NCBI GenBank assembly: GCA_965637545.1
Contig: OZ281500.1
Location: 12,648,001 to 12,712,000, forward strand
From: Phallusia mammillata
Taxonomy: Eukaryota
DNA length: 64,000 nt
Reading direction: 5' to 3'
The notes below the pieces were generated by a model. It was given only the letters and a program-made list of their open reading frames with translations. It searched no databases and had not been told where the DNA came from. Each line of letters begins with the position of its first letter. Position 1 is the first letter of the stretch. The translations under genes were made by a program, and so were the position numbers. Shown here piece by piece: positions 49,668-51,719 of this stretch.

Positions 49668-50211
49668 GTATAGAGGGTTTGTCGGCTTCTTTACGACAAC
49701 GCCACCTATGAAGATTATGTATTAAATTCATTCACTTTATCTCATCATTTTTGGATGAAACATAAACCCTTTTGTCGACTTAACTTACCGACAACTCAGT
49801 AGGCCTACTGCTAAGGCAGAGGTGCACAACCTGCCGCCGTGAACATGTATGCCAAAATCTATGTACTGACGGCCGTGACGTAAGCAAAACTTTTCATATT
49901 ATAGATTTAGAATTCAAAACTGCTCCAAATAGTTTTTATAGGACTGAAAATAGTTTTACCAGCCTAATAGCCATTTGTGTCCGAGTTTTTGTACTCATGT
50001 TGTATGCAAACAATGCGAAAAAGCACTGCTGCGTTACAATACAGATGGTTACGTCATAAACACTAAAGATTGATCGCTAGACCAGTACTCTTCAACCGGT
50101 ATGCACGGTGCACCCTGGGGTGCACAGTACGAAAAGGTATACAAGGGTGCATCACAAACTTTTAATGAACCATTATTATTATGTAAAAGCATATAGAGCC
50201 AATAAATGATA

Positions 50212-50263
50212 AGCTGCAGACAGTGCACACTGTTTCGACCTATAAGGTCTCATCAGTGCAGCT
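50212..50263 (-). ncRNA. Type-I hammerhead ribozyme (antisense copy)
   Basis: Exact reverse complement of 50514-50565, with all core nucleotides intact. Confidence 0.92.
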
Positions 50264-50513
50264 GGTGTGCACTGTCTGCAGCTTATCATTTATTGGCTCT
50301 ATATGCTTTTACATTGATACTGTGACACTGAGCCGACTTCACTGTGGTTCCCAAGCAGTTGCTTGGCCATTGTGAGCCAGTTTCATCTGTGCTGTATGTC
50401 CAGTTGTGGCATCGCACAGACTAGGTGATGCATGGGGTTGTACCCTGCGCTCCCAACAAACTGGAGTGCCGTTGAATGGCTACACTAGCCAATGCGGCCG
50501 ATCTCTCGTCACC

Positions 50514-50565
50514 AGCTGCACTGATGAGACCTTATAGGTCGAAACAGTGTGCACTGTCTGCAGCT
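50514..50565 (+). ncRNA. Type-I hammerhead ribozyme
   Basis: Stem I AGCUGCA/UGCAGCU (7 bp); core CUGAUGA (50521-50527); stem II GACC-UUAUA-GGUC; GAAA (50541-50544); stem III CAGU-GUGC-ACUG; GUC cleavage triplet, with the cut predicted after 50558. Every conserved hammerhead position is present. Confidence 0.95.
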
Positions 50566-51719
50566 TATCATTATTATTATTATTTGAAGATTTAGGTTTC
50601 AACTTGTACAAATGAACCTATGTATATGTTTTTAAATGATGATGTCTAATTTGATTTTTGTATTTAGGTGTAATATTAAAAGTTATTGTTTAGTTAACTT
50701 TTTTGTCTGTGATGTCTCTATTCAAATATTTTACGAAAACTTCCACTTTTTTATCAATGATGATGATACCCATAAGGATTTTTCATATCGCTTTTTACCC
50801 CAGTTTACCTTTTAAGTAAAGGGGTGCATGAGTTTGTCACAACAACTTTATAGGGGGTTCACCAAACCAAAAAAGGTTGAAGAGCACTGCGCTAGACTAT
50901 TCAGCTCAATCTGTACATCAAGTGAGAAAATAATCTTGAATTTTTAGGCGCCATTGGGTAGCATAAATATGAGATAAACCTCAGTATTTTATAAACAAAA
51001 CAAGAGGACGCTTGGTGGCCGTTGGTGAAATGAGTATCTGCTATGCGGCCGTTGTAACGAAAAGATTGTTCACCTCTGTGCTAAGGGTATTGAAATTGCA
51101 ATCAACCAAGTTGGATTTTTTAGCTCTAACAGCTGATTAAGACAAAAAGAAAAATCATCTTGTCCCGTTAAAATTGCAGATTACCTACATCACTTTACTT
51201 GTATAATTAGAGTGTGCCTGTGCTGAATGTCACACATCCGCAATCAGAGCAAAGCCGTTAATTTTGCGGCGATCTTTTTCAAGTCGTTAGCCGGATAGGG
51301 TTTGGCGCTTAATTGGCCGCGTTTTTTAACTTCTATGGTGCTGTTTCGGTTGACCCCAAACTAAAAGGTCGCTGCCCACGTCTGGAGGCATTGTTTCGTT
51401 CGCTATACGTATCGTCACATGCAATTAGACGAATACATGCGCCGATAATTTGTTCAACGAAACTTTTTTCTTTTTCTCTTTCGCAATTGGAAAAGGTTTG
51501 TCGCAAAAAAGAAGCATTTTTTCCCCCTGAGGTGCATTGAGAAGTCTTGACCGTTCAGTGGAAAAAAATCGCAATACCGCTTCTTTAACGGTATATAAGA
51601 ACAAGTTGATGGTCATTGCCTCATATTCGTTTCTTGCAAACGAAATTTACCGTCGTACACCGATTATCGCTGTGATGGGCACAGCAATGGAAGTCACTAG
51701 TATAAGTGATCGAATTAAA

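What the first reader, a model, noticed from the sequence alone, without database searches (positions are those of the whole stretch)
50181..50572. Retrozyme-like 282-nt self-cleaving RNA unit with two opposed hammerhead ribozymes
Seen in sequence: a perfect type-I hammerhead at 50514-50565(+) and an identical one at 50212-50263(-). The + strand carries the 3' half of a third at 50265-50283, so GUC cleavage sites at 50276 and 50558 are exactly 282 nt apart. The inverted left arm reads straight through the unit junction (hammerhead into TTATCATTTATTGGCTC), so the template was a multimer or circle. There is no ORF, and the ends sit in a duplicated CATTATTATT, with 4-nt microhomology to the element end. 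Established: hammerheads mark Penelope-like element pseudo-LTRs, inverted terminal copies are typical of PLE insertions, and non-autonomous hammerhead retrozymes that produce small circular RNAs are known from some plants and animals. Inference: this is a retrozyme family yielding a ~282-nt monomer or circRNA, mobilised by a PLE and perhaps favouring (ATT)n sites. A decayed PLE remnant lies 6 kb upstream. I cannot tell whether this family has been described in this taxon.
Basis: partly seen in the sequence, partly recalled or inferred. Interest (0 to 1): 0.88.

Follow-up and report, generated by a model that had tools for sequence, protein, structure and literature searches.

The report
Sea-squirt hammerhead retrozyme, Penelope-style insertion
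This is one roughly 390-bp copy of a young, abundant, non-coding jumping element that carries a self-cutting (hammerhead) RNA motif; it sits as two pieces joined head to head, the known footprint of Penelope-type retrotransposons, so it is a new member of a known class.

Summary
It is wrong in three details.

- **One ribozyme per unit.** The 282-nt unit carries one hammerhead. The two opposed hammerheads come from how the copy was inserted. The insert is two reverse-transcribed pieces joined head to head between a 10-12 bp target duplication.
- **Family-wide anatomy.** One outer end lies 5-15 nt past the cleavage site, the other 31-45 nt past it. This one-sided ~30-nt tail is a PLE hallmark. 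Target duplications are 9-14 bp.
- **Inner ends cluster** at the cleavage site and helix III (13 of 34, p = 4e-8).
- **Abundance and age.** The genome holds 368 exact hammerhead cores, against 0 for the reversed-pattern control. Full units differ from the majority sequence by 0-2%.
- **Setting.** The genome is an ascidian with apparently intact PLEs.
- **Not supported.** No (ATT)n target preference, no PLE remnant upstream, no autonomous partner sharing this hammerhead among 30 PLE 3' ends sampled.
- **Untested.** Self-cleavage and circular RNA.

Metazoan retrozymes have been known since 2020. Other agents of this scan read sister copies in this genome the same way.

The parts
50171..50180 (.). 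Left copy of the target-site duplication (CATTATTATT)
   Evidence: the same 10-12 nt flank both ends of the insert.
50181..50267 (-). Piece A: unit positions 234-282 followed by 1-38, so a hammerhead plus the 38-nt 'tail' end. The outer end is at 50181.
   Evidence: 87 nt, 100% identical to the unit, and it reads through the unit junction.
50212..50263 (-). Hammerhead of piece A. The predicted cleavage lies between 50219 and 50218 on the minus strand.
   Evidence: RF00163, 22.8 bits, full model; repeat I1.
50265..50572 (+). Piece B: unit positions 271/274-282, a full unit 1-282, then 1-10(14), the 'short' end. GTG at 50265-50267 is junction microhomology shared with piece A.
   Evidence: (repeat D1).
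50277..50558 (+). One complete 282-nt unit, from cleavage position +1 to C17. It has one difference (172 T>C) from the majority of 29 full units.
50514..50565 (+). Hammerhead of piece B. The predicted cleavage is after 50558.
   Evidence: the minimum-energy fold of the junction context gives the three-helix hammerhead.
50569..50578 (.). Right copy of the target-site duplication. Bases 50569-50572 (CATT) fit both the unit and the target.

Best explanation
The feature is one insertion (50181-50572) of a recently active, non-autonomous, non-coding retroelement of the metazoan 'non-LTR retrozyme' class, in an ascidian genome. The family's repeat unit is 282 nt and holds one canonical type I hammerhead with a stable helix III.

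**Likely mechanism**
1. Multi-unit or read-through transcripts are cut by the ribozyme into unit-length RNA. This RNA may be ligated into circles.
2. A Penelope-like element's RT and GIY-YIG nickase act in trans and open the target with nicks about 12 bp apart.
3. cDNA synthesis starts at two preferred template sites just 3' of the cleavage site, about +9 and about +38.
4. The short ends outnumber the tail ends, so +9 is probably the main start. When both target strands prime, two cDNAs form and join head to head.

This gives an inverted, 5'-truncated piece and a one-sided ~30-nt tail. The two opposed hammerheads are that by-product.

**Shown:** the anatomy, copy numbers, target duplications, end classes, junction clustering, the family's youth, and PLEs with long ORFs in the same genome.

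**Inferred:** catalysis, circles, PLE action in trans, and priming on both strands.
For: - **Dispersal.** 124 matches at 94-100% identity came from only 40 scored candidates out of 2316. They include arrays of 2-5 units.
- **Genome-wide counts.** 368 exact hammerhead cores. The hammerhead 3' end carried through +5 occurs 1011 times, through +9 694 times, and through +16 295 times.
- **End classes.** In 29 loci, every hammerhead is followed by one of three things: the next unit, a short end at +5 to +15 (about 24 cases, mode +9/+10), or a tail end at +31 to +45 (about 23 cases).
- **Target duplications.** 17 insertions carry duplications of 9-14 bp, mostly 12. The whole inserts are 114-1002 bp and have no ORF.
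- **Orientation.** Opposed hammerhead pairs face outward 18 times and inward once.
- **Inner junctions.** 13 of 34 fall at unit positions 268-282 or 1-2 (p = 4e-8). Among pieces holding at least one full unit, 9 of 20 do so (p = 6e-7).
- **Youth.** Full units differ from the majority sequence by 0-6 substitutions plus occasional indels.
- **PLEs in the genome.** At least 90 GIY-YIG hits, with RT and C-terminal GIY-YIG in one ORF of up to 973 aa, in copies 99.7% identical.
- **Same tail in a PLE.** One PLE family here shows the same two 3'-end classes: a short end, or that end plus a ~38-nt tail.
- **Literature.** An inverted 5'-truncated copy, partial tandems and a one-sided 30-40 bp tail are described PLE features (PMC8557442). 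Retrozymes as PLE derivatives are proposed in 10.64898/2026.07.22.740005.
Against: - No autonomous PLE sharing this hammerhead or tail turned up among 30 sampled PLE 3' ends from at least 6 families. Their hammerheads are the minimal type and are unrelated in sequence.
- Short ends outnumber tail ends genome-wide. Many copies are therefore simple 5'-truncated ones, and the two-primer picture fits only a subset.
- Several inner junctions read 1-4 nt across the cleavage site (positions 279-282). Those templates were uncleaved, re-ligated, or joined by template jumping.
- The Rfam score is below the family threshold.
- There is no direct RNA evidence. The only runs available are assembled contigs of uncertain library type. 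In them, depth over the hammerhead is 5-10 times the depth over the body, roughly mirroring genomic copy number rather than a dominant unit-length RNA.
Confidence: 0.8

Rival explanations
1. These are solo pseudo-LTRs or truncated ends of an autonomous, ORF-bearing PLE. They would not be an independent non-autonomous family.
For: Hammerheads sit in PLE pseudo-LTRs (PMC4209133). PLE insertions are heavily 5'-truncated. The genome holds many PLEs. Only 30 of more than 400 candidate PLE loci were examined.
Against: Complete inserts flanked by target duplications are 114-1002 bp and contain only unit sequence. Arrays repeat the same 282 nt head to tail. No ORF exists in any frame. The unit has no similarity to the 3' regions of the 30 sampled PLEs, apart from one incidental insertion in L043.
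Confidence: 0.07
2. It is a SINE-like element copied by a LINE (non-PLE) reverse transcriptase. The inverted pieces would arise by L1-style twin priming.
For: Twin priming by LINE RTs also gives head-to-head inversions with target duplications (my own knowledge; I did not test it here).
Against: The 3' end has no poly(A) or microsatellite tail. No tRNA-like or pol III part was found. The one-sided ~30-nt tail and partial tandems are PLE traits, and an autonomous PLE family in this genome shows them too.
Confidence: 0.07
3. It is a fold-back or MITE-type DNA transposon whose terminal inverted repeats happen to carry a hammerhead on each strand.
For: The window copy has perfect inverted arms of 50 and 63 nt.
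Against: The two outer ends are not inverted copies of each other: one is at +9, the other at +38. The inner breakpoints and arm lengths differ in every copy. Many copies have no inverted arm at all. Target duplications vary from 9 to 14 bp.
Confidence: 0.03
4. It is an ordinary satellite spread by recombination, and the hammerhead-like motif has no activity.
For: Self-cleavage was not tested. Older copies decay in core positions, as neutral DNA does.
Against: The family is dispersed on all 8 large contigs, with target duplications and 5' truncations. All 13 core bases and all three helices are intact in the young copies. The hammerhead segment is the least variable part of the unit (0.35% per site against 0.6-1.2% elsewhere; small counts).
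Confidence: 0.03

Closest known systems
Metazoan non-LTR retrozymes (Cervera & de la Pena 2020, PMC7229834)
   Same: A 170-400 nt non-coding unit with one type I hammerhead. Dispersed short tandem repeats. Target duplications longer than 4 bp. A canonical hammerhead rather than a minimal one. A proposed link to PLEs.
   Different: They were described in cnidarians, molluscs, amphibians and others. I found no report for tunicates. In this family most copies are 1-1.5 units with an inverted arm, not long arrays. Unit GC is 50%, at the upper edge of the reported '<50%'. Circular RNA is not shown here.
Penelope-like elements and their pseudo-LTR hammerheads (PMC4209133, PMC8557442)
   Same: Partial tandems. 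An adjacent inverted 5'-truncated copy. A one-sided 30-40 bp tail. Hammerheads near the 3' end. Opposed hammerhead pairs 100-700 bp apart were already noted in 2014.
   Different: This family has no RT/EN ORF. Its hammerhead has a stable 5-bp helix III and should work as a monomer. The PLEs of this genome carry minimal hammerheads with a 1-2 bp palindromic helix III.
Plant LTR retrozymes (PMC4918200)
   Same: Non-autonomous, hammerhead-bearing, and thought to cycle through circular RNA.
   Different: The plant elements have type III hammerheads in true LTRs, a PBS and PPT, 4-bp target duplications, 600-1000 nt RNAs and Ty3/gypsy helpers. None of these features applies here.
Schistosome Sm-alpha and newt satellite 2 hammerhead repeats (from my own knowledge; I did not look them up here)
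   Same: Abundant short animal repeats that carry a type I hammerhead.
   Different: Those hammerheads have a short helix III and act as dimers. Here helix III is 5 bp with a closed tetraloop.

Membership tests
Hammerhead ribozyme type I (Rfam RF00163) | Conserved core (CUGANGA ... GAAA ... H17) with three helices, helix I open | tested here: met
   all core bases are present. Helices I, II and III are 7, 4 and 5 bp. The minimum-energy fold of the junction context gives the three-way junction.
Hammerhead ribozyme type I (Rfam RF00163) | Score at or above Rfam's gathering threshold (34 bits) | tested here: not met
   the window copies score 22.8 bits. The best copies in the genome score 29.3 bits. 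The shortfall comes from the longer helix III and from loop 2, not from the core.
Hammerhead ribozyme type I (Rfam RF00163) | Mg2+-dependent self-cleavage | not testable with these tools
   This needs in vitro transcription.
Metazoan non-LTR retrozyme | Short (170-400 nt) non-coding unit with a type I hammerhead | tested here: met
   282 nt. The longest stop-free stretch is 53 aa in any frame of a multimer.
Metazoan non-LTR retrozyme | Head-to-tail tandem copies dispersed in the genome | tested here: met
   arrays of 2-5 units on several contigs. Most insertions are 1-1.5 units. Some arrays abut assembly gaps.
Metazoan non-LTR retrozyme | Target-site duplications (retroposition) | tested here: met
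   9-14 bp in 17 insertions.
Metazoan non-LTR retrozyme | Expressed as linear and circular unit-length RNA | tested here: inconclusive
   runs that look like transcriptomes hold the unit and not its unique flanks. They are contigs of unrecorded library type, so they cannot show ends or circles.
Penelope-like element (autonomous) | ORF with a PLE-type RT and a GIY-YIG endonuclease | tested here: not met
   none in the unit or the window. Such ORFs exist elsewhere in the genome.
PLE-mobilised non-autonomous element | PLE insertion signature: inverted 5'-truncated copy, partial tandem, one-sided 30-40 bp tail | tested here: met
   compared with PMC8557442 and with an autonomous PLE family of this genome.
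PLE-mobilised non-autonomous element | 3' end shared with an autonomous partner | tested here: not met
   no similarity to 30 sampled PLE 3' regions.
Plant LTR retrozyme | Type III hammerheads in LTRs, PBS/PPT, 4-bp target duplication | tested here: not met
   the hammerhead is type I, there are no LTRs, and duplications are 9-14 bp.

The most novel reading that the evidence does not exclude
The fixed geometry of the insertions may be a DNA fossil of the still unknown PLE integration cycle. cDNA would start at two defined sites, about 9 and about 38 nt past the ribozyme cut. It would often end exactly at or within 15 nt of the cut, because the template is usually a unit-length RNA whose 5' end the hammerhead made in vivo. 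If so, this young ascidian family shows in vivo self-cleavage without any RNA data. It also gives a base-level model for how PLE RT/EN produces inverted copies and the one-sided tail.
Probability: 0.3. Interest if true: 0.6.

Novelty: new member of a known kind. Interest (0 to 1): 0.35.

Why it matters
[quoted passage not shown] I found no report of them there. Because the family is so young, its insertion junctions can be read base by base. Those junctions carry the PLE signature. That is independent structural support for the recent proposal that animal retrozymes ride on Penelope-like elements. They also give testable positions for where reverse transcription starts and stops relative to the ribozyme cut. 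For annotation, head-to-head hammerhead pairs in this genome should be read as single retroelement insertions. They are not a two-ribozyme RNA gene, and not microRNA hairpins, which the perfect 50-bp fold-back mimics in Rfam scans.

Tried and rejected
- **Rfam at gathering threshold over the window:** nothing.
- **mir-759, mir-17 and mir-210 hits at E of 1e-4 to 1e-5:** these are the 50-bp fold-back of the two pieces. They score far below threshold and I rejected them.
- **ARAGORN:** no tRNA-like part.
- **PLE remnant in the window:** no tblastn hit for seven PLE ORF fragments from this genome. Pfam found nothing on the ORFs at 42.8-45.4 kb.
- **Autonomous partner:** blastn of the unit against 30 PLE loci found only an incidental insertion in L043. 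The flanks of diverged hammerhead hits L036 and L040 were unique DNA or older copies of the same family.
- **Two patterns longer than 35 places that held sets of letters:** I replaced them with a plain pattern.
- **Covariation in the hammerhead:** not applicable. Older copies decay at random, including in the core.
- **Taxon from a lysyl-oxidase exon through the protein atlas:** uninformative.
- **Reads:** only assembled contigs were on offer, so RNA ends, strand and circles could not be read.
- **Spliced-leader-headed copies of this family:** none in the loci I held.
- **Earlier findings by sequence, and by a six-word query:** blank.

Full report
**1. Observation**

- The plus strand at 50514-50565 reads as a complete type I hammerhead. 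Helix I is AGCUGCA/UGCAGCU. The core is CUGAUGA. Helix II is GACC/GGUC with loop UUAUA, followed by GAAA. Helix III is ACAGU/ACUGU with loop GUGC. C17 is at 50558.
- The reverse complement of 50212-50263 is identical (63-nt arms, 100% complementary).
- The direct repeat 50265-50290 = 50547-50572 sets a period of exactly 282.
- Rfam's Hammerhead_1 aligns over its full length to both copies, with every core base matched. The score is 22.8 bits against a gathering score of 34, so the default scan is blank.
- Chance is excluded. The hammerhead pattern occurs 368 times in the genome, and 0 times when read backwards.

**2. What the unit is**

- I took window 50277-50558 as the unit, from cleavage position +1 to C17. 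Searching the window's own 240-Mb assembly gave 124 matches at 94-100% identity from only 40 scored candidates out of 2316.
- The matches lie on all eight large contigs and include head-to-tail arrays of 2-5 units.
- No reading frame of a multimer stays open for more than 53 codons. There is no tRNA-like part.
- Twenty-nine full units differ from their majority sequence by 0-6 substitutions plus occasional indels. The window copy differs by one base, 172 T>C. I used the majority sequence only to count differences and do not report it.
- The hammerhead segment is the least variable part: 0.35% per site against 0.6-1.2% elsewhere. The counts are small.
- The exact start region of this youngest subfamily occurs 70 times. 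The hammerhead 3' end occurs 1011 times. The wider family therefore has several hundred to about a thousand pieces, of several ages.
- Older copies at 70-90% identity share mainly unit positions 174-282.

**3. Anatomy of the insertions**

I mapped 29 distinct insertions.

- *Two classes of outer end.* Downstream of each hammerhead the sequence does one of three things. It continues into the next unit. It stops 5-15 nt past the cleavage site (mode +9/+10...UGCAGCUUA). Or it stops 31-45 nt past it (...GCUUUUACAU).
- *One of each per composite insert.* Inserts with two arms have one end of each class, on opposite strands and both pointing outward. They are flanked by a target duplication of 9-14 bp, mostly 12, in 17 cases.
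- *Orientation genome-wide.* Close opposed hammerhead pairs face outward 18 times and inward once among the first 100 cores listed.
- *The window copy.* Piece A (50267 down to 50181, minus strand) is unit 234-282 plus the 38-nt tail. Piece B (50265-50572, plus strand) is unit 271/274-282, one full unit, and 10-14 nt past the cut. The two pieces share GTG at their junction. The target duplication is CATTATTATT.
- *Counts along the 3' end.* The hammerhead 3' end is found 1011 times carried through +5, 694 times through +9, and 295 times through +16. Short ends therefore dominate, and many copies are plain 5'-truncated pieces without a tail.

**4. Inner breakpoints**

- In 17 composite inserts, 13 of 34 inner ends fall at unit positions 268-282 or 1-2. 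That window is 6% of the unit (binomial p = 4e-8).
- Among pieces that hold at least one full unit, 9 of 20 end there (p = 6e-7). This is not explained by having picked the loci for full-length matches.
- Five or six ends lie at +1 or within one base of it: L027 (both arms, with a TA filler), L025, L006 and L008.
- Others read 2-4 nt across the cut (positions 279-281) or stop inside helix III (268-274).
- Reverse transcription therefore tends to end where the ribozyme cuts or where its most stable hairpin begins.
- Three readings are consistent with this: templates whose 5' end was made by self-cleavage, with occasional end-to-end template jumping; stalling at the folded ribozyme; or both. The data do not separate these readings.
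- Both outer ends lie beyond the cut. The template at the start of cDNA synthesis was therefore uncleaved, re-ligated or circular.

**5. Link to Penelope-like elements**

- The literature describes PLE insertions as heavily 5'-truncated partial tandems. They often carry an adjacent inverted 5'-truncated copy and a 30-40 bp tail at one end only (PMC8557442).
- Opposed hammerheads 100-700 bp apart were already noted in 2014 (PMC4209133).
- This genome holds at least 90 GIY-YIG hits. The domain is C-terminal, in ORFs of up to 973 aa that also carry an RT domain. Some copies are 99.7% identical.
- One of these PLE families ends in the same two ways: at a short end, or at that end plus a ~38-nt tail.
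- The retrozyme thus carries the PLE footprint.
- However, the PLEs I sampled carry minimal hammerheads with a 1-2 bp helix III. They have no sequence similarity to the unit. No helper is identified.

**6. RNA**

- The unit's words occur in 20 runs from 8 studies and two organism labels.
- I laid four runs on the window. All four are stored as assembled contigs, 14-28 Mb in total, with longest contigs of 7-14 kb. This resembles transcriptomes, but the library type is not on record.
- They cover the unit and another repeat at 49540-49674. The unique flanks are almost uncovered.
- Some contigs run from the element into other flanks. Depth over the hammerhead is 5-10 times that over the body, roughly as in genomic copy number. 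This gives no sign of a dominant unit-length RNA. Such libraries and contigs could not show one anyway.
- The unit folds more stably than shuffled sequence: z = -2.8 as a linear molecule and -2.9 as a circle, with 65% of bases paired.
- In the monomer fold the hammerhead strands pair in an alternative way. In the junction context the active three-helix fold is the minimum.
- Cleavage and circularisation remain inferences from other species (PMC7229834).

**7.

- *(ATT)n preference:* the 18 target duplications are AT-rich, like the genome, but only the window's is ATT-like.
- *Microhomology:* 1-4 nt between the target and the short end is common.
- *PLE remnant upstream:* not found.
- *Surroundings:* non-coding DNA between lysyl-oxidase/SRCR exons (40.0-41.4 kb) and a Sushi-domain exon (54.4 kb).

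**8. Taxon and prior knowledge**

- Notes of other agents in this scan call the genome a sea squirt.
- I checked this partly. The 16-nt ascidian spliced leader, recalled from memory, occurs 3860 times, against 0 for the reversed control.
- I found no paper on retrozymes or PLE hammerheads in tunicates. One ascidian genome paper lists 9 type I hammerhead loci without comment (PMC8704543).
- The class itself has been known since 2020. Its PLE origin was argued for vertebrates in 2026.
- The scan has met this kind before on other DNA of the same genome. One follow-up read a 252-bp head-to-head hammerhead element as a PLE-style insertion (s1-361502). My analysis agrees with that reading. It adds the end-class and breakpoint statistics.

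**9. Verdict**

The feature is real. It is a new member of a known kind. It is of moderate interest, mainly for the base-level record it keeps of PLE-type integration.

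Noticed in passing
window 50077-50097 / 50875-50895 and 50132-50148 / 50797-50813: Two nested imperfect inverted repeats (21 nt at 86% and 17 nt at 82%) bracket the retrozyme insert. The retrozyme may have landed inside an older fold-back or MITE-like element of about 430 bp, which also holds GGTGCAC palindromes at 50104-50128.
   Followed up: no
window 49540-49674: An unrelated short repeat is covered at high depth by contigs of all four runs, while the DNA around it is not. It is probably another abundant or expressed dispersed element.
   Followed up: no
window 49301-49346 and 55943-55988: A GC-rich 46-nt motif is repeated at 80% identity, 6.6 kb apart. It is probably the end of another dispersed repeat family.
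   Followed up: no
window 50181-50314: The two pieces form a perfect 50-bp hairpin with a 34-nt loop. Rfam microRNA models (mir-759, mir-17, mir-210) hit it at E of 1e-4 to 1e-5. If transcribed, it would be a long double-stranded RNA and a possible small-RNA source against the family.
   Followed up: partly
L042-L047, L059, L070 (PLE family with CTGAAGA-type minimal hammerhead): Copies of this autonomous PLE end either at ...TTATTAAATA or about 38 nt further on. This is the same one-sided tail seen in the retrozyme. L070 carries a partial tandem of the 3' region.
   Followed up: partly
genome-wide; L056:1078: The 16-nt ascidian spliced-leader sequence occurs 3860 times, dispersed on all contigs. 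That is far more than SL genes alone would explain, and it fits other agents' notes on SL-headed retro-copies. None adjoins this retrozyme family in the loci I held.
   Followed up: partly
L016 (C6:2903520-2904863), L023, L024: Retrozyme arrays and composite inserts abut or contain assembly gaps (runs of N), which I left unfilled. Tandem arrays are therefore probably under-counted. The four units of the L016 array share two private substitutions (168 C>T, 218 G>A). The neighbouring copy L015 has the same left flank and the same two substitutions, which suggests a local segmental duplication.
   Followed up: partly
L036, L040, L078, L080, L081: Older copies (70-88% identity) repeatedly begin at unit position 174. 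A 3' module of about 110 nt that includes the hammerhead may be shared between retrozyme subfamilies with different bodies.
   Followed up: partly
window 40006-41374 and 54410-54754: There are exons of a lysyl-oxidase/SRCR gene (Pfam PF01186, E = 4e-26) and, 13 kb downstream, an exon with a Sushi domain. The retrozyme lies between them in non-coding DNA.
   Followed up: no
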